A DNA stretch of 61,649 nucleotides, filler included, from Choristocarpus tenellus KU-1152 (GCA_964200185.2; 10 parts of 10 records of this genome joined end to end with filler, not necessarily neighbours in it), one strand, 5' to 3'; counted from the whole stretch's first letter, positions 21,301 to 33,389 are shown. The notes: generated from the letters alone by a model not told the origin. Made by a program: numbers and translations.

Positions 21301-22098
21301 NNNNNNNNNNNNNNNNNNNNNNNNNNNNNNNNNNNNNNNNNNNNTTAATTAATTAANNNNNNNNNNNNNNNNNNNNNNNNNNNNNNNNNNNNNNNNNNNN
21401 CTTGTACACATATTCTTGGGGGTATGGGTATGTCACAAACATATACAAGTCACATAAGAAGAGAGCTCAAACAAAACACAAATCTGGACCACCTTTCAAG
21501 CCTATCATTTTCACCCTACCCCTTCAAATATTCGAAAACAGTTCTCTGTACAAACGTCAGACCAACACAAAGTCCCTGCCAACAGCCAAGTCGACTAGCT
21601 CTCAATGACCAAGACACCCATACACAGTCCCTGCATCTCGAACCTTTCAAAACTAAATCCATCAAGATACTATGCTTCTCTGGTCACACCAGATGCAAAA
21701 CAGTTACACGCACTCAAACACAACCTTTGCCCAGACGACATAAAACACTAACAGAGCAACATTCGCCTCCACACTGCTCAACTACATTCATCATTCAACA
21801 TCCATCTTTTGCCAACATTTCTTTTAAACGTTTAAACAACGGGAAATTGATACTCTCAACAACCTAACCGCACAGATACACCAGCGTAAGTTATTATAAG
21901 GGGGCACCACACAGACTCTCTATACTTGACATTCACCACCATCTACCACCTTTGCAGATCATTCTATTGCTGTCCTCATCCCAGCACACAAAAGACAACA
22001 ATCAACAACACCAACAGACCAAGCTTTGTACCGAAGAACATCTAATACACAAACCAAAGCTATACACCTTTCCTTCATACACATCACAGAATACTTAC

Positions 22099-22170
22099 CA
22101 CTAACTTGGTTGTCATGGAGAACTAGCCCAGTTAGGAGCTTAAGGTTGCCAAATTCTGGTGGAATTGAAC
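22099..22170 (-). CDS. LRR exon F: GSIPPEFGNLKLLTGLVLHDNQVS
   Basis: 72 nt, CAG acceptor, GTAAG donor. Confidence 0.95.
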
Positions 22171-25100
22171 CTGCCAAACACCAACAAAAGCGCACCTTAG
22201 ACTGGATCTGTTTGACAAACAACTACTTCACACTATTCACTCACTCCTCTAGGTCTAAGTTGCACCGGATGGTCCAAACCTCTAACAAAACCATGCTTGT
22301 ACAGTATCCAATCCAAATACATAGAAAACGGAATGCTGCAATGAGATGAGAATCAGAATACATACGTACAAAAAACGTACCCCATAATTACTTCATCTAC
22401 TGACAAAATACGAACTATCCCTACCAAATTATCATACACAAATATTACAATAAACCAAATACATTATGTTGGGTCCAACTTAGGTTATCCTTCACTTCCC
22501 ACCTCTACCAACAATGAATACTTAACCACCACCTTACAACCAAAAAACGATATCTTACAACTTATGCACCGGAAACACTCCCCATCGATGAGATGTACCC
22601 AACACATAAATGACCTTGTCCTCCCATTTACAACATCAGAACCAACCACAAGACGGTTCAACTACATGACACAAACTCTCACAAAATCACATACCTTCTG
22701 CCAGAGCAACACAAACCCCCTGCCAACAGCCAAGTCAACTAGCTCTAAATGACCAAGACACCCATACAGTCCCTGCATCTCAAACCTTTCACTCTACAAA
22801 CTATATCCATCCATCAAGAAAATATGCTTCTCTGGTCACACCACATGCAAAACAGTTACACACACTCAAACACAACCTTTGCACATACGAGACAAAACAC
22901 TAACACAACAACATTCGCCTCTACACAGCTCAACTATTTTCATCATTCAACGTCCATCCTTTGCAAACATTTCTTTCAAACGTTTAAACAACAGGAAATT
23001 GATACTCACATCAACCTAATCGCACAGATACACCAACAAAAATTGTCAACAAGAGGGCACCACACAGACTCTTTATATTTGACATTCACCATCTACCACC
23101 TTTCCAGACCATACCATTGCTGTCCTCATCCCAACACAAAAAAGACAACAATCTACAACACCAACAGACCAAGCTTGCAACCAAAGAACATCTAATACAC
23201 AAACCAAAGATAGATAACATTCCTTCATACTCTACAAAGAATACTCACCACTAAGCTGGTTCTGACTGAGATCTAGTTGTGTTAGGAGCTGAAGGTTGCC
23301 AAATTCTGGTGGAATTGAACCTGCCAAACACCAACAAAAGCGCACCTTAGACTAGATCTGTTTGACAAACAACTACTTCACACTATTCACTCACTCCTCT
23401 AGGTCTAACTTGCACCAGATGGTCCAGACCTCTAACAAAACCATGCTTGTACAGTATCCAATCCAAATACATAGAAAATTGAATGCTGCAATCAGATGAG
23501 AATCAGAATACATCCATACAAAAAACGTACCCCATAATTACTTCACCTACTGACAAAATATGAACTATCCCTACCAAATTATCATACACAAATATTACAA
23601 TAAACCAAATACATTATGTTGGGTCCAACTAAGGTTATCTTACACTTGCCACCTCTACCAGACACCACCGTGCTCTACCAACAACTAATACTTAACCACC
23701 ACCTTACAACCAATAAAACATATCTTACAACTTATGCACCGGAAACATTCCCCATCGACGAGATATACCCAACACATAAATTACCTTGTCTTCCCATTTA
23801 CAACATCAGAACCAACCACAAGACGGCTCAACTGCATGACACAAAATCTCACAAATATCACATATCTTGTCATTATTCCAACAAAGGTGCATGTTAACAG
23901 TAACAAGGGAGAGGGCCTGACCTTGTACACATATTCTTGGGGGTATGGGTATGTCACAAACATATACAAGTCACATAAGAAGAGAGCTCAAACAAAACAC
24001 AAATCTGGACCACCTTTCAAACCTATCATTTTCACCCTACCCCTTCAAATATTCCAAAATAGTCCTCTGTACAAACGTCAGACCAACACAAAGTCCCTGC
24101 CAACAGCCAAGTCGACTAGCTCTCAATGACCAAGACACCCATACAGAGTCCCCGCATCTTAAAACCTTTCACTCTACAACTCAATCCTTCAAGATAGTAT
24201 GCTTCTCTGGTCACACCACATGCAAAACAGTTACACACACTCAAACACAACCTTTGCCCAGACGACATAAAACACTAACAGAGCAACATTCGCCTCCATA
24301 CTGCTCAACTACATTCATCATTCAATGTTCATCCTTTGCAGACCATTCCATTGCTGTCCTCATCCTAACCTAAAAATGAAAGCAATCAACAACACCAACA
24401 GCCCAGACTTCCTACTAAAGAGTATCCACTACAAAAACCAAAGCTATACAAAGAATACTCACCACTAAGCTGGTTTAAATGGAGAGCTAGTTTTGTTAGG
24501 AGCTGAAGGTTGCCAAGTTGCGGTGGAATTGAACCTGCCAAACACCAACAAAAGGCAGCTTAGACTGGATCTGTTTGAGAAACAACTACTTCACGCTATT
24601 CACACACTCCTCTAGGTCTAACTTGCATCAGATGGTCCAGACCTCTAATAAAACCATGCTTGTACAGTACCTAATCCAAATGCATAGAAAATTAAATGTT
24701 GCAATAAGATGAGAATCAGAATACATCCATACAAAAAACGTACTCCATAATTACTTCATCTACTGACAAAATATGAACTATCCCTACCAAATTATCATAC
24801 ACAAATATTACAATAAACCAAATACATTATGTTGGGTCCAACTAAGGTTATCTTACACTTACCACCTCTACCAGACACCACCGTGCTCTACCAACAATGA
24901 ATACTTAACCACTACCACCACCACATAAAAACATTATTACAACTTATGCACCGGAAACACTTCCCACCAACGAGATATACCCAACACATAAATTACCTTG
25001 TCTTCCCATTTACAACATCAGAACCAACCACAAGACAATTCAACTGCATGACACAAAATCTCAAGAATATCACATATCTTGTCATCATTCCAACAAAGGT

Positions 25101-28100
25101 GCATGTTAACAGTAACAAGGGAGAGGGCCTGACCTGGTACACATATTCTTGGGGGTATGGGTATGTCAAAAATATACACAAGTCACATAAGAAGAGAACT
25201 CGAACAAAACACAAATCTGGACCACCTTTCAATCCTATCAGTTTCACCCTACCCCTTCAAATATTCGAAAACAGTCCTCTGTACAAACATCAGACCAACA
25301 CAAAGTCCCTGCAAACAGCCAAGTCACACTTCAAACAAAACAATAAAACAAACTTGGACTCCAACAAGATTGAAATATTGGCACTTCTCAAAACTATCTA
25401 TCATTCATGGCATCAAAGAAAACATCTCTCCACCAAGGCTGTTCAATGATCAAGACATCACTACACTGCTCCTGCACCTCAAACCGTTTAATCTACAAAT
25501 TAACCCTATCAATATATTATGCTATTCTTCTGGTCACACCCTAATAATCCAACCATTTCAAACTCACAAAAGAACTAGTACCCAATTGTTTGCAGTCCAA
25601 TTACATCTTACCAACCAGCTTGTTGGAGCCAAGATCACACTTCTCCAGTGCAACCAGTTTCCCAAGCTCCTTAGGAATGCGCCCTGTCAGGAATTAAAAT
25701 ATAAATGATTGGTCGTGCTTCCACATTAAAGAAACACCAGTCATGCTCCTCAAAAACATCAAGTCCACCCCATCCACAATCATCTCGGACCAAAATATGT
25801 CAGCATGAAGTTATGCACACACAAACATATACGATTAGAACAGATGTGCGATACACTCTCAACATACCTCAGCGTAAAGTATCCATAGAAATATCCACCC
25901 AAGCACATGCCGTCATTCACCTTCAAACTACTTATATCATTGCACCAGAATATCATACAAGGACTAAGTGGGGTATGTGGAATATATAATTAAAATTCTT
26001 ACAACATAGTAAACGCAAGCCAAACATACCCTCAACAACCCCAACAAGACAACATACCACAATTTCCGTACGGGAAACAAACACACTGAGGGTTATCTTC
26101 ATCACAGAGTGGATCTCTTTGAGTAAATAACCAACTTGTCTTCCCAACCATATCATCACCTCTTAAAAATTCAATTGCTTCAACAAATGACACCTTGGTA
26201 TACATTCGACCTTATCACTATGTGATCTGAGTACCTCTGTGGAAGGGATAAAACACTCCAAACACTTGCAAGGCAGGAGATCACACTATTCACTCACTCC
26301 TCTAGGTCTAAGTTGCACCGGATGGTCCAAACCTCTAACAAAACCATGCTTGTACAGTATCCAATCCAAATACATAGAAAATGGAATGCTGCAATGAGAT
26401 GAGAATCAGAATACATCCATACAAAAAACGTACCCCATAATTACTTCATCTACTGCCAAAATACGAACTATCCCTACCAAATTATCATACACAAATATTA
26501 CAATAAACCAAATGCATTATGTTGTGGTTCAACTTAGGTTATCCTACACGTGCCACCTCTACCAGACACCACCGTGCTCTACCAACAATGAATATTTAAC
26601 CACCAACTTACAACCAAAAAAACATATCTTACAACTTATGCACCAGAATCACTCCCCATCAACGAGATATACCCAACACATAAATTACCTTGTCTTCCCA
26701 TTTACAACATCAGAAACAACCACAATACAATTTAACTACATGACACAAAATCTCACAAATATCACATATCTTGTCATTATTCCAACAAAAGTACACGTTA
26801 CGAGTATCAAGTCACATAAGAAGAGAGCTCAAACAAAACACAAAATTGGTCCACCTTTCAAACCTATCATTTTCACCCTACCCATTCAAATATTCCAAAC
26901 AGGCCTCTGTACAAACGCCACACCAACACAAAGTCCCCGCCAACAGCCAAGTCAATAATTTCTCAATGACCAAGACACCCATACACAGTCCCTGTATCTC
27001 AAACCTTTCACTCTACAAACTAAATCCATTCATCAAGATAATATGCTAGTCTGGTCACACCAAATGTATAATAGTTACTCACACTCAAACATAACCTTTG
27101 CCCATACGAGACAAAATACTAATACAACAACATTCTCCTCCACACTGTTCAACTACATTCATCTTTCAACGTTCATCCTTTGCAATCATTTCCTTTAAAC
27201 ATTTAAACAACGGGAAATTGATACACACAACCTAAACGCACAGATACACCAACATAAATTGTCAACAAGGTGGCACCACACAGACTCTATATATTTCACA
27301 TTCACCATCTACCACTTTTGCAGACCATTCCATTACTATCCTCATCCCAACACAAAAAAGACAACAATCAACAACGCCAAAAGACCAAGCTTGCAACCAA
27401 AGAACATCCTATACACAAACCAAAGATAGATAACATTCCTTTATGCACTACAAAGAAAACTCACCACTAAGCTGGTTGTGATCCAGACCTAGTACTGTTA
27501 GGAGCTTAAGGTTGCCAAATTCTGGTGGAATTGAACCTGCCAAACACCAACAAAAACGCACCTTAGACTGAATCTGTTAGAGTAAACAACTACTTCACAC
27601 TATTCACTCACTCCTCTATGTCTAAGTTGCACCGGATGGTCCAGACCTCTAACAAAACCATGCTTGTACAGTATCCAATCCAAATACATAGAAAATTGAA
27701 TGCTGCAATGAGATGAGAATCAGAATACATCCATACAAAAAACGCACCCCTTAATCACTTCATCTACTGACAAAATACAAACTATCCCTACCAAATTATC
27801 ATACACAATATATTATCATACACAAATATTACAATAAACCAAATACATTATGTTGGGTCCAACTTAGGTTATCCTTCACTTCCCACCTCTACCAACAATG
27901 AATATTTAAAAACCACCTTACAACCAAAAAACCGTATCTTACAACTTATGCACCGGAAACACTCCCCATCGACGAGATATACCCAACACATAAATTACCT
28001 TGTCTTCCCATTTACAACATCAGAACCAACCACAAGACGGTTCAACTACATGACACAAAATCTCACAAATATCACATATCTTGTCATTATTCCAACAAAG

Positions 28101-31100
28101 GTGCATGTTAACAGTAACAAGGGAGAGGGCCTGACCTTGTACACATATTCTTGGGGGTATGGGTATGTCACAAACATATACAAGTCACATAAGAAGAGAG
28201 CTCAAACAAAACACAAATCTGGACCACCTTCCAAACCTATCATTTTCACCCTACCCTTTCAAATATTCGAAAACAGTCCTCTGTACAAGCGTCAGACCAA
28301 CACAAAGTCCCCGCCAACAGCCAAGTCGACTAGCTCTCAATGACCAAGACACTCATACACAGTCCCTGCATCTCAAACCTTTCACTCTACAAAATAAATC
28401 CATCCATCAAGATAATATGCTAGTCTGGTCACACCACATGCAAAACAGTTACACACACTCAAACACAACCTTTGCCCAGACGACACAAAACACTAAAACA
28501 ACAACATTCGCCTCCACACTGCTCAACTATTTTCATCTTTCAACGTCTATCCTTTGCAAACATTTCTTTTAAAATTTCAAACAACGGGAAAATGATACAC
28601 ACAACAACCTTATCACACAGGTACACCAACATAACTTGTCAACAAGGGGGCACCACACAGACTCTCTATATTTCACATTCACCACCATCTACCACCTTTG
28701 CAAACCATTCCATCGCTGTCCTCATCCCAACATAAAAAAGACAACAATCAACAATGCCGAAAGACCAAGCTTGCAACCAAAGAACATCCTATACACAAAC
28801 CAAAGCTATACACCATTACTTCATACACTGCAAAGAAGACTCACCACTAAGCTGGTTGAAATAGAGACTTAGTTCTCTTAGTAGCTCAAGGTTTCCAAGA
28901 TCTGATGGAATTGAACCTGCCAAGCACCAACAAAAGCGCACCTTAGACTGGATCTGTTTGAGTAAACAATCACTTCACACTATTCACACACACCTCTGGG
29001 TCTAAGTTGCACTGGATGGTCCAAACCTCTAACAAAACCATGCTTGTACAGTATCCAATCCAAATACATAGAAAATGGAATGCTGAAACGAGATGAGAAT
29101 CAGAACAAATTCATACAAAAAACGTACCCCATAATTACTTCATCTACAACCATCTACCAGCTATGCAGACCATTCCATTGCTGTCCTCATCCCAACATAA
29201 ATAAGACATCAAGAACGGCAACGGTGCAATTTCTCATTTGCCACTATGTAACCGAATTTTCTCTCTATGTTCCTTTTCATTGCAGTCATCTTCTTTTTTC
29301 ATCTCACCTCACCGTTCTTTTCACTTCCAATTCTTTCGATAAAATATCAGCCAATGTAGCTGTAAATGAGTCACGGAAGAAATTATCATCATTGCTTTAC
29401 AAGGTTGTCCAAACATTTTTGTCATGATCCTTGTGATTTCGAGATTAGTACAAATGAGGTTGCAAAGAATAGAGGAATGACTTTAAACCTGATATATCCG
29501 GATAATTGACTTAGAAAAATGTTGCAAGGGACAGAGGAAATAAACAAAGACCATCTCCACACTCTGGGCTAAAAACAAATGCGTGCGAATACAGCAACAC
29601 AAACTTGAAATGCAACCATCACTCCAGCCTCGATCTGTTGTTATCTGCGTCTCCAATTAAAGATGTCTTACATTCTTCGAAAGTCTCGATCAAACAAAAT
29701 TATGACACCTACGTCACAACCGACATTCTGAATGATAACCCTCCCTGGTCCACCGCAATACTAAAAAGTAAAAAGTAAATGTGGTTTCCTTGGTACAAAT
29801 GTCAACAAACCTATTTCTTACAAGGCTGCTTCAGGTTGAACCCCATTGTGTTTGGAATAATGACAGAAAACAAGGAGGCAATTAAGGCGTCCTACAGAGC
29901 AACCTCGACGCCAACGGCACGAAGTGTGAATTATTAAAAAAAACACGAACACATTCTCATCTGTTCCACGTGTGTGATCAGGAACAATAATCCTTCAACG
30001 ACCATCATGAGTACAATTGTTGAAAAGAGAAGGAATGGTGCAGATCGCTGTCGTGCAAAATGTGTGCATCATCCGTAACACTAATCAAACCTCAAACTAA
30101 AACTTACATGAGAAAAAAAGTACCCATCACTAAAAGTCGGCTCAAACCTAGTCCGTTATCTCTGAAACATAGTTTTGTGTCAACCGTGTCATATGGATCC
30201 TATCAAATGCAAGAGCCTTTCGACTATCAAATGCAAGAGCCTTTCGACTATCAAATGCAAGAGCCTTTCGACACTTTTTCGCAATAACGTAAGTCGAAAA
30301 TTGAAAAAACATCTATAAAGATCAGTCCAATTCTCAGACTGCACACTCTATCATCACTTTTGGTATGATTATCTTATCACCAGGAAGGAAGGAGTAAACA
30401 TCAATAACGATCAGTCCAATTCTCAGACTACATAATCTATCATCACTTTTGGTACGATTATCTTATCACCACAAAGGAGTACTTGTAAATAGGACAGAAA
30501 ACATACCAAAATAAAACTGCATGTAATACTAGTTACTAGGAAGCCAACTTCCTTGAACCCTAAATGGTTCGGGCAGTAATACCAAAATGGAAATATATAT
30601 GAAAGATGAACACGCTATTATACCACAAGAAAAGATGCGAAACTGTCATAGAATCACAATGATGTCGTGGGAAAAACATCACAATATATTTTATCACACA
30701 AGCGACATCAATACAACAGATTCAAACCACATAATATAATGTTTTTATTAACACCTGCTGTTGTGTCGGGTCTCAAGCGTACAACACAGTTGTCATTTCA
30801 ATATGCCTCCTATGCAGCTCATCATCAGTAACAGGGAACAAGCCTTACGCAAGGTGGTGTTCAACTGACCTTGAAGGTTGTTCCCCTCCAAAACAAGCTT
30901 GGACACTCTCCCAGTGCTGTCCACCTTGACACCATACCACTCTCCGACTGGAGCAGCACTACCCCACTTCGAATTATTTGTCCAAGATGGACCACCTGTA
31001 GCCTCATACAGGGTCATGAGCACTTGGCGATCAACCACTCCGGGGGAAGACAGAGGCAAAGGGGCACATTTAACCCCAACCTTGGCAACCAGCGGCCTGC

Positions 31101-31506
31101 CTGAGTCGACCAAGGCTTGAACAATATCCATCTTGTTGCAACACTCCTTGATATCCATGCCTAGTTCATCCGCCATAGTGCACAGTTCCATCCACGAAGT
31201 GCCAGCTAGCATGCTCTTAACTGCCTCACCCCCGACCTCAGGGTATTGCAGCACTGCCTCAATTTCCGATGCACAAAAGCGTCCAATTGCTGTAAGGAGT
31301 CGCTTATCCAGCATAGAAAGAACCTCCACACTCTCGGGGGGGTAAAGATGCACAGAAGAGATCAAGTCGAGAAGGTATGCTGTTGCCTTTTGCCCTTCAG
31401 GTGTGGCAGCATTTGTGGAGTTGTCCCATAGAGGAGATAGCCTTTGAATGATGTTCTTCAGCGGGCCTTGAATTACAAACTTCTTTCCCTTTGCTGGGGA
31501 GTCGAC
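22099..31506 (-). CDS. LRR protein with one LRR per exon (candidate ROCO/immune-receptor type; partial at both ends). Exons 31506-30870, 28916-28845, 27536-27465, 25683-25612, 24534-24463, 23320-23249, 22170-22099
   Basis: The large exon ends with an LRR N-cap (DRQVLMTLYEATGGPSWTNNSKWGSAAPVGEWYGVKVDSTGRVSKLVLEGNNLQG, phase-1 GT donor). Six 72-nt CAG/GT-bounded phase 1-1 exons follow, each encoding GxIPxxxGxLxxLxxLxLxxNxLx. Confidence 0.92.
23249..23320 (-). CDS. LRR exon E: GSIPPEFGNLQLLTQLDLSQNQLS
   Basis: 72 nt, CAG acceptor, GTGAG donor. Confidence 0.95.
24463..24534 (-). CDS. LRR exon D: GSIPPQLGNLQLLTKLALHLNQLS
   Basis: 72 nt, CAG acceptor, GTGAG donor. Confidence 0.95.
25612..25683 (-). 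CDS. Divergent LRR exon C: GRIPKELGKLVALEKCDLGSNKLV
   Basis: 72 nt, CAG acceptor, GTAAG donor, in a non-repeat intron context. Confidence 0.9.
27465..27536 (-). CDS. LRR exon B: GSIPPEFGNLKLLTVLGLDHNQLS
   Basis: 72 nt, CAG acceptor, GTGAG donor. Confidence 0.95.
28845..28916 (-). CDS. LRR exon A: GSIPSDLGNLELLRELSLYFNQLS
   Basis: 72 nt, CAG acceptor, GTGAG donor. Confidence 0.95.
30200..30272. repeat. 24-bp tandem repeat x3 (CTATCAAATGCAAGAGCCTTTCGA); a ~59-bp duplication follows at 30320/30409
   Basis: Read directly; lies in an intron of the LRR gene. Confidence 0.9.
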
Positions 31507-33189
31507 CTTCAAAGAAAACGGAATTGTCACACAGATGAGAAGGCACACCAGGTCAATGGAAATATCTTCCCATACAGTCACAATATCAGTACTGCATTGG
31601 ACCAAAACATGCTTTCATCAATTTGGTATTTCATTCCAGTCTTGATCAGACTTCTATACCCTGAACACACTACACGTTGGTCAGAGTATAGGACTGTACC
31701 TAGCAACTAAGGTAATCCGATGCCCTCAATTTTTGGTCTGCAGCAGTGATCAAGGGCACCATCAAAAATGCCCCAGGCTGCACAGAAAAAATCAGCCCTG
31801 TCCATTATAACAACAAACCATTTCCCTTTCCCATTCATCACACTCTTTTTTTGTAACAATTGCTTGCACATCAAGTGTGTTGAGTGGATTAGAGGGTCAC
31901 CTTGCTATGCTGAATGTAACCAGCGACCACAGCAATAACCCCTGCTCTCATCCGAACCTCTAGAGTGTGACCTTGGACTAATGCGATATTGGCACTTCTC
32001 TCAGCTTCCATCAGGTATCGCACATCCCCTTCACTGGCAACGTAACTGTTCAAATTGTTTTCTGCTACCGGAAGATGGGCATCCTATACAAACAAAACCG
32101 CATCAGGGATGAAGTGTCAGGTTCGAAGAGGTTTGGAGTTAATATCAAGCAATGCGAAGTTGAGATTGTTGATGTGACCTTTATATTCAATTCCAAACAT
32201 ACTTCTCCTCAACATGTCAAAGCTTTGATGATATTTGCAAAGGCTGTATAATAATATTTCCGAAATAATCTTTTAGAAACACATGTGGTGCACATGACGT
32301 AAGCGATCGCTATCATACATACATGCTTACCCTCACTACTTGGAGAGTTGGAAATGGCTTCTGAGAACAAACTGCAAACGCTCACTTCAAAGGAGATAAA
32401 ACACTACCAAATTTTACAGCATACAATGATACAGCAAGGTACATATATTTCACAATCCTGTTTGCACGCTCTACAACAGAGCGTCCACAGTATCAAAAAA
32501 CAGTGTTCCTGTCTCTCACTTGTAAAACGTTCTCCATAGTGGTGCGTTTATGGCAGGTTACTTTACCTCTCAAAATGTATTCCCCCCTACCATGGGCAGG
32601 TACTGATTTTCACTATGCAACTTCAACTATTTGAAGTAGAATGTACATTTCAGAAGCTGAATTTGAAAAGTGACATAGAAACCAATCACAGGATCTAAGT
32701 GATGTTAATAAATTTATCATCTCATATACAAACAGTATCTAATCACCTTCCAGACCAAATCATTTGCTCGCTATTCCATTGAGTGTATCAGCATGCTGCA
32801 CGATCTTCAAATTTATCATTGCAGCAGCACCAACCACCTAGCAATGCATACCCGCTTCCACTTATTGCAACCACATTCAAGTTTTTTCAAGCCCCTTCAA
32901 TACTCAAAAAATCATCTCGAATTCCAACTGTAGCATACTTCCTAGCAAAATACAAATGTCACCAATTTCATTCTTAATGACAGACGTCTAGAGATACTCT
33001 ACATAAAAATTGCATGGTTACTAGGTATATTTTGAAAAAATGGATTTTCATCATACCTTCCAGTTCTGCAAGGACAGCAAAAGAGAAATACTGTACTCAA
33101 TTATAAACAGTACGTTTGAAATAATATAGTACAGCAAATACAAAATGAGAGGATAATTGTCTGTTGGTGCCATTAAGTGGCATCTGTAT

Positions 33190-33389
33190 TGCTTAAAGTA
33201 TCTGGTCAGGGGGGTTCTACATCACGGTGTGGATTTTGGCCCTGACCATCAAAAGTACTCTTACATTTTCCATTCCACACATGCGACCAAATCACCCAAA
33301 AAATGTGACATGGACAAATGGACCCCAAATGGACAGTCGCCCCACCCCCACCCCCCCCCCCCCCCCCCCCCCCCCCTCCTCCCCCCCTC
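33190..33389. mobile_element. MITE family A at contig end
   Basis: gcttaaagtatctgg...ccccaaatggacagtcgcc followed by poly-C. Confidence 0.75.

What the first reader, a model, noticed from the sequence alone, without database searches (positions are those of the whole stretch)
22099..28916. Hypervariability confined to solvent-exposed LRR codons, exceeding intron divergence
Positions 15/17/19/20 of the 24-aa repeat (x residues of LxxLxLxxN) read E-S-Y-F (A), V-G-D-H (B), K-D-G-S (C), K-A-H-L (D), Q-D-S-Q (E) and G-V-H-D (F), while the framework is nearly fixed. By hand count, exons E and F differ at 9 of 21 nt in codons 14-20. Their adjacent introns (22171-22480 vs 23321-23630, ungapped) differ at about 11 of 310 nt. 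Coding sites diverging about ten times faster than introns implies strong diversifying selection or targeted mutation/conversion at the ligand-binding face.
Basis: partly seen in the sequence, partly recalled or inferred. Interest (0 to 1): 0.85.

Follow-up and report, generated by a model that had tools for sequence, protein, structure and literature searches.

The report
Brown-algal LRR gene, fast-evolving binding face
This is a seaweed (brown alga) gene built from repeated one-exon modules whose four surface-facing amino acids change far faster than the introns around them, a pattern already published for brown-algal candidate immune receptors and seen here in a further species and gene family.

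Summary
The piece is contig CAXNAD020002037.1 of the brown alga Choristocarpus tenellus. It holds six 72-nt 'type I' LRR exons; five of them sit in near-identical exon-plus-intron units. First and second bases of codons 15/17/19/20 change about 17 times faster than the flanking introns (95% interval 8 to over 60; P about 1e-12). Silent sites between those codons do not (1.2x, interval up to 5.8x). That favours selection over targeted mutation. The same four sites were reported under positive selection, on the concave face, in Ectocarpus (PMC3341825) and Saccharina (PMC11378527). Short-read contigs confirm exons D and F, and spliced joints show the family is expressed. What is new is modest. 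The gene is probably not a ROCO GTPase: it belongs to a brown-algal family with an unnamed helical N-terminal domain, and no homologue found carries a Roc domain. Introns give a built-in neutral yardstick, and the signal repeats in Ectocarpus homologues (8x). Somatic diversification could not be tested.

The parts
31901..32083 (-). First visible coding exon (61 codons), first part of an unnamed helical domain; the true 5' exons were not found in the piece
   Evidence: Splice borders and profile match, E 1e-27; tblastn with homologues; annotated product P0001
30870..31506 (-). Exon encoding the rest of the helical domain, a linker and the N-terminal LRR cap; ends in the same phase as the LRR exons
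   Evidence: cap shared with many LRR proteins
28845..28916 (-). LRR exon A (72 nt); variable residues E-S-Y-F; missed by the public annotation
27465..27536 (-). LRR exon B; V-G-D-H
25326..26280 (-). Foreign block of about 955 nt that replaces the exon-bearing part of one unit; carries exon C
   Evidence: No match elsewhere in the piece; sharp borders; related contigs at higher depth in public runs
25612..25683 (-). LRR exon C, a divergent type I exon; K-D-G-S
   Evidence: spliced joint C to D that skips exactly the 1077-nt intron
24463..24534 (-). LRR exon D; K-A-H-L
   Evidence: short-read contig over 24336-24551 with one difference
23249..23320 (-). LRR exon E; Q-D-S-Q
22099..22170 (-). LRR exon F; G-V-H-D; missed by the public annotation
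   Evidence: contigs identical over 22050-22160 in two runs
21401..29147 (-). Tandem array of exon-plus-intron units, about 1.1-1.4 kb each and about 80-95% identical with indels; runs off the contig end at 21401

Best explanation
The piece is the middle of a brown-algal LRR gene in which every repeat is one 72-nt exon. Whole exon-plus-intron units are duplicated and exchanged by ordinary unequal recombination or gene conversion, within the gene and with related loci. This keeps introns and framework codons alike (inferred from the unit structure and the foreign block with exon C). Ordinary mutations that change the four exposed residues on the concave face are then favoured by selection, probably because they change what the protein binds (rate excess shown; cause inferred). 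Many copies in the genome raise the supply of variants, and same-phase exons can be recombined or skipped without breaking the frame. The product is most likely a cytoplasmic recognition protein for non-self, with an N-terminal helical region in place of the Roc-COR GTPase (inferred from homologues; the ligand and any immune role are untested).
For: Bases 1-2 of codons 15/17/19/20 at 16.7x the intron rate, P 7e-13; interleaved silent sites 1.2x; other third bases 0.9-1.4x (same result). pN 0.59 at these codons against 0.08 in the framework. Independent replicate in eight Ectocarpus units: 8.0x, P 3e-13, framework 0.54x. Positions 15, 17, 19, 20 are the four most variable in 35 repeats of homologues. 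Strand at repeat positions 15-17, pLDDT 93-98; fold matches plant LRR receptor ectodomains at E 5e-11. Same sites published. Related units at up to about 40 times the depth of unique contigs, and spliced joints. Same scheme described for fungal HET-E repeats.
Against: Only five units and eight sites in the window. The rate model assumes one tree, while the best trees differ between the two intron sides and the exon, though weakly. Many variable codons differ at two or three bases between otherwise close units, which is a lot of steps for so little time. No ligand or phenotype is known for any brown-algal gene of this kind. The 5' and 3' ends of the gene are outside the contig.
Confidence: 0.8

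Rival explanations
1. Short gene-conversion tracts copy the variable patch (codons 14-20) from older, more diverged type I exons elsewhere in the genome into young units. Selection keeps the new patches. The patch is then older than its flanks, and the exon-to-intron ratio overstates the substitution rate.
For: Multi-base codon differences. Exon C shows that exchange with foreign loci happens. In pooled, non-independent Ectocarpus pairs the interleaved silent sites differ at 64 of 180 against 88 of 563 in the first half of the exon; on a tree this is 2.0x the intron rate, interval 0.6-4.9.
Against: In the window the interleaved leucine codons keep the unit's own spelling (CTA, CTA, CTC), with one change in three sites across five copies, whereas the foreign exon C uses other codons there. 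The interval tops out at 5.8x, below the lower limit of 8x for the replacement sites.
Confidence: 0.13
2. A dedicated machinery mutates or recombines these codons on purpose, possibly in somatic cells, giving an adaptive-type repertoire (the hypothesis of PMC3341825).
For: The variation is tightly focused; third bases of codons 17 and 19 are T in all five copies, as a templated mutator might leave them. Contigs drop rare variants, so somatic variants would be invisible.
Against: No base preference: all four bases occur at the variable sites, and silent adenines of CTA at codons 13 and 16 are untouched, against adenine-directed mutagenesis. Contigs at single-copy depth match the assembly at exons D and F. 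PMC11378527 notes that no somatic recombinant loci or recombinase have been reported.
Confidence: 0.05
3. The four sites are merely unconstrained, or the differences are assembly errors in a repetitive contig.
For: The assembly is fragmented and the contig ends inside the array.
Against: Loss of constraint would give the intron rate, not 17 times it. Short-read contigs reproduce exon F over 22099-22160 with no difference and exon D with at most one. All six exons are free of stops and keep their splice sites.
Confidence: 0.02

Closest known systems
Type I LRR exons of brown-algal LRR-ROCO GTPases and related non-ROCO LRR genes (Zambounis et al., PMC3341825; Teng et al., PMC11378527)
   Same: One 72-nt exon per 24-residue repeat, same consensus and phase, similar N-terminal cap, signs of local duplication and of exchange with other loci, and selection at exactly positions 15, 17, 19, 20 (14, 16, 18, 19 in the 23-residue numbering) on the concave face.
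   Different: Another species, not among those studied. About 200 extra residues of an unnamed helical domain lie before the cap. Complete homologues end after the repeats, with no Roc-COR. No inverted intronic exon in this piece. Introns between neighbouring units are alike enough to serve as a neutral yardstick, which I did not find used in the parts of the two papers I read.
Unnamed brown-algal LRR family with the same N-terminal domain (Ectocarpus siliculosus CBJ33668.1, Scytosiphon CAM9505455.1, Cladosiphon g5942.t1 and g15026.t1)
   Same: 38-44% identity to the window's product, same domain order, LRRs on 72-nt exons, the same four variable sites.
   Different: The homologues have a predicted N-terminal helix and long coiled-coil-like stretch that are not found in this contig. 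Their units can be far longer (about 10 kb in L003).
Fungal NLRs with high internal conservation (Podospora het-d/het-e WD40 repeats; PMC1805685, PMC13449251)
   Same: Near-identical repeats kept alike by concerted evolution, exchanged within and between genes, with four surface codons under diversifying selection.
   Different: Different repeat fold and a NACHT ATPase; here each repeat is its own exon and the intron travels with it. A parallel in how it works, not kinship.
Plant LRR receptor ectodomains and PGIP
   Same: Same plant-type 24-residue LRR fold and cap; binding on the concave face.
   Different: Those are extracellular and not built one exon per repeat (own knowledge). No signal peptide or kinase was seen in the homologues here.

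Membership tests
Brown-algal type I LRR exon genes | Each LRR on one 72-nt exon, all in the same phase | tested here: met
   Six of six exons
Brown-algal type I LRR exon genes | Consensus GxxPxxLxxxxxLxxLxLxxNxLx | tested here: met
   L or F at position 7, one C at 16 in exon C, one V at 23 in exon F
Brown-algal type I LRR exon genes | Host is a brown alga | tested here: met
   Choristocarpus tenellus, Phaeophyceae
Brown-algal type I LRR exon genes | Diversifying selection at positions 15, 17, 19, 20 | tested here: met
   Rate test against introns; no full codon site model was run
Brown-algal type I LRR exon genes | Traces of shuffling within and between loci | tested here: met
   Tandem units and foreign block with exon C
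Brown-algal type I LRR exon genes | Spare LRR exons on the non-coding strand (present in only some loci) | tested here: not met
   None in this piece; optional feature, 13 of 46 non-ROCO loci in Ectocarpus
LRR-ROCO GTPases | Roc-COR module after the LRRs | tested here: inconclusive
   The contig ends inside the array. No Roc or COR match in any homologue scanned or listed, no Roc-like motif in eight loci, and two complete homologues end after the repeats. Probably absent.
LRR-ROCO GTPases | Protein starts with a cap of about 45 residues directly before the LRRs | tested here: not met
   At least 200 residues of another domain precede the cap
Somatically diversified receptor (lamprey VLR-like) | Rearranged or mutated loci among cells of one individual | not testable with these tools
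   Only assembled contigs were available, which drop rare variants
Somatically diversified receptor (lamprey VLR-like) | Mutator signature at silent and replacement sites alike | tested here: not met
   Interleaved silent sites at 1.2x the intron rate, no base bias; few sites
NLR-type receptor with a cell-death domain | N-terminal domain of a known executor fold and a central ATPase | tested here: not met
   No Pfam, PDB-sequence or Atlas match for the N-terminal region; only generic helical-repeat folds, best Z 9.9; no ATPase domain in homologues. The first 100 residues of the homologue were modelled poorly.

The most novel reading that the evidence does not exclude
This is an undescribed class of brown-algal immune receptor, without a GTPase, that joins an unnamed helical signalling region to an LRR sensor whose exon units are exchanged by a dedicated process during the life of a clone. 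Near-identical introns would be the homology arms for that exchange. The receptor family alone is fairly likely (about 0.4); the programmed somatic part is what would make it surprising.
Probability: 0.05. Interest if true: 0.85.

Novelty: new member of a known kind. Interest (0 to 1): 0.3.

Why it matters
The pattern is published, so the finding mostly confirms it. Three small additions are useful. It extends the pattern to Choristocarpus, which by my own knowledge belongs to the earliest-branching brown-algal lineage, so the system may be as old as the class. It points to a non-ROCO family with an unnamed N-terminal domain that carries the same signature and that I did not find described. 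And young units with alignable introns give a neutral yardstick that the earlier exon-only tests lacked. Because exons D and F have distinctive sequence, the locus is a practical target for the open question of whether brown algae rearrange these exons somatically. No immune receptor has yet been proven in brown algae.

Tried and rejected
A homologue search on P0152 residues 60-290 found nothing because I chose a poorly predicted part of that protein. Pfam, PDB sequence, Atlas feature and fold searches gave no name for the N-terminal domain; hits to designed helical repeats and TPR proteins are at a level common for helical models and were not accepted. A likeness of the homologues' first helix to plant or fungal cell-death domains, and of the last helices to a SAP-like module, is from memory only and found no support. 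A search for inverted or broken LRR exons in the introns found none. An adenine-directed mutator of the diversity-generating retroelement type was rejected (silent adenines intact). Assembly error was rejected. The joint from exon D to a B/F-like exon start could be skipping of E, but the shared ends of the exons exceed the assembly word length, so I do not count it. Pairs near the 25% cut-off may be false alignments and were left out.

Full report
Source. A search with the large upstream exon returned one protein, 100% identical, named as a partial product of Choristocarpus tenellus, a brown alga. It lies on contig CAXNAD020002037.1 of GCA_964200185.2, 11,989 nt, the length of this piece. The public annotation splits the region into two partial genes and leaves out exons A and F.

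Anatomy. On the minus strand there are two upstream exons, 31901-32083 and 30870-31506, then six 72-nt exons with AG and GT borders in one phase. The introns between LRR exons are 1077-1781 nt. From 29147 to the contig end at 21401 the DNA is a tandem array of exon-plus-intron units, about 80-95% identical. One block, 25326-26280, has no match in the piece. It replaces the exon-bearing part of a unit, has sharp borders and carries exon C, which differs from the others at 21-26 of 51 framework bases. I read this as an exchange with another locus (inference).

The observation. The residues and both counts are right. Over all ten pairs the acceptor-side intron differs by 7.8%, the donor side by 14.7%, codons 14-20 by 36.7%, and bases 1-2 of codons 15/17/19/20 by 67.5%. 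With a tree fixed from 354 intron columns, those eight sites change at 16.7 times the intron rate (interval 8 to over 60; P 4e-13 to 7e-13). Their third bases run at about 3x (not significant). The silent bases of leucines 13, 16 and 18 run at 1.2x (0.07-5.8), other third bases at 0.9-1.4x, and framework bases 1-2 at 0.86x. Counting gives pN 0.59 at the four codons and 0.08 elsewhere. So the excess follows amino-acid change, not position in the DNA.

Is the sequence real? Contigs from three public runs were laid on 22050-28000. In two runs, contigs match exon F over 22099-22160 with no difference, and one covers exon D with one difference; these may be the assembly's own strain, so they exclude assembly error but are not independent alleles. 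Other contigs of the unit stand at up to about 40 times the depth of unique ones, a rough sign of many copies. The third run holds spliced joints: one skips exactly the 1077-nt intron between C and D, another joins a related cap exon to a B-like exon. Its loose ends show related exons with yet other residues at positions 19-20. The family is thus expressed; that a given joint comes from this very copy is not shown. Contigs drop rare variants, so somatic change is untested.

Relatives. The N-terminal domain finds a set of proteins from Ectocarpus, Scytosiphon and Cladosiphon at 38-44% identity. None listed or scanned has a Roc or COR match, eight loci show no Roc-like motif, and two complete members end just after the repeats. 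Their LRRs also sit on 72-nt exons. Positions 15, 17, 19 and 20 are the four most variable in 35 of their repeats. Eight Ectocarpus units with alignable introns repeat the test: 8.0x at the eight sites (4.9-14; P 3e-13), 2.0x at interleaved silent sites (0.6-4.9), 0.54x in the framework. Third bases of the four codons are at 4x there, but many such changes alter the residue.

Structure. A model of the Cladosiphon homologue puts a beta-strand at repeat positions 15-17, with 19 and 20 just after it, at pLDDT 93-98, and matches plant LRR receptor ectodomains. That these side chains face the concave surface follows from the established fold and from the published model; I could not measure exposure directly. 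The window's N-terminal domain folds confidently as a stack of helices but has no convincing match in any library.

Mechanism. Shown: same-phase single-repeat exons, tandem units with near-identical introns, a foreign block, a replacement-specific rate excess at four sites, and splicing in the family. Inferred: recombination or conversion renews and homogenises the units, and selection for new binding properties fixes changes at the four sites (0.80). Rival: short conversion tracts bring in older patches (0.13); the unit's own leucine codons inside the patch argue against it, but there are only three such sites. Rival: a programmed or somatic mutator (0.05); there is no base bias and silent adenines are intact. 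Loss of constraint or error (0.02). An immune role is a reasonable guess from the pattern and is unproven.

What is known. PMC3341825 describes these type I exons in Ectocarpus, shuffling within and between loci, 46 non-ROCO loci of the same build, and positive selection at sites 15, 17, 19 and, more weakly, 20 on the concave face. PMC11378527 finds the same four sites and alternative splicing, and notes that somatic recombinants have not been reported. The fungal het-d/het-e repeats follow the same scheme with four selected codons. The gene meets the tests for a type I LRR exon gene. It should not be filed as a ROCO: one defining feature is not met and the other cannot be seen in this contig.

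Verdict. Real, well supported and already described as a phenomenon: a new member of a known kind, interest 0.3. The residual value lies in the species, the unnamed non-ROCO family and the intron yardstick.

Noticed in passing
window 30870-32083 (minus): About 200 residues of a confidently folded all-helical domain with no Pfam, PDB or Atlas match, shared only with brown-algal LRR proteins among the hits; homologues add a conserved N-terminal helix and a coiled-coil-like stretch.
   Followed up: partly
window 25326-26280: Foreign block with exon C. Public contigs show a joint 24113 to 25339 at high depth in all three runs, so the same left border probably exists in many other copies; C-like exons with other variable residues are spliced in the third run.
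   Followed up: partly
acceptor-side vs donor-side introns of the units: The intron before each exon changes more slowly than the one after it, both here (0.75x vs 1.42x) and in Ectocarpus units (0.64x vs 1.47x). This could reflect splice signals or biased conversion; unexplained.
   Followed up: partly
window 27534 to 24461 joint in run X3: A contig joins exon D to a B/F-like exon start, which would fit skipping of exon E, but may be an assembly path or another gene copy.
   Followed up: no
window 30200-30272 and 30307-30478: Three perfect copies of a 24-nt unit and two copies of an 89-nt unit inside the intron after the cap exon.
   Followed up: no
window 33340-33389: The contig ends in a long run of C, a likely cause of the assembly break; the 5' exons expected from homologues were not found between 32084 and 33389.
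   Followed up: partly
L003 13828-66682 (Ectocarpus sp. 6): The homologous gene spans about 64 kb, with single LRR exons inside duplicated units of about 8-10 kb at 76-87% identity.
   Followed up: partly
protein P0159: A homologue's model is fused to a copia-type gag region, probably an annotation merge with a neighbouring retrotransposon.
   Followed up: no
L006 10001-13781 and L004 (proteins P0158, P0160): Some Ectocarpus homologues carry a tandemly repeated helical unit of about 25 residues before the shared domain.
   Followed up: no
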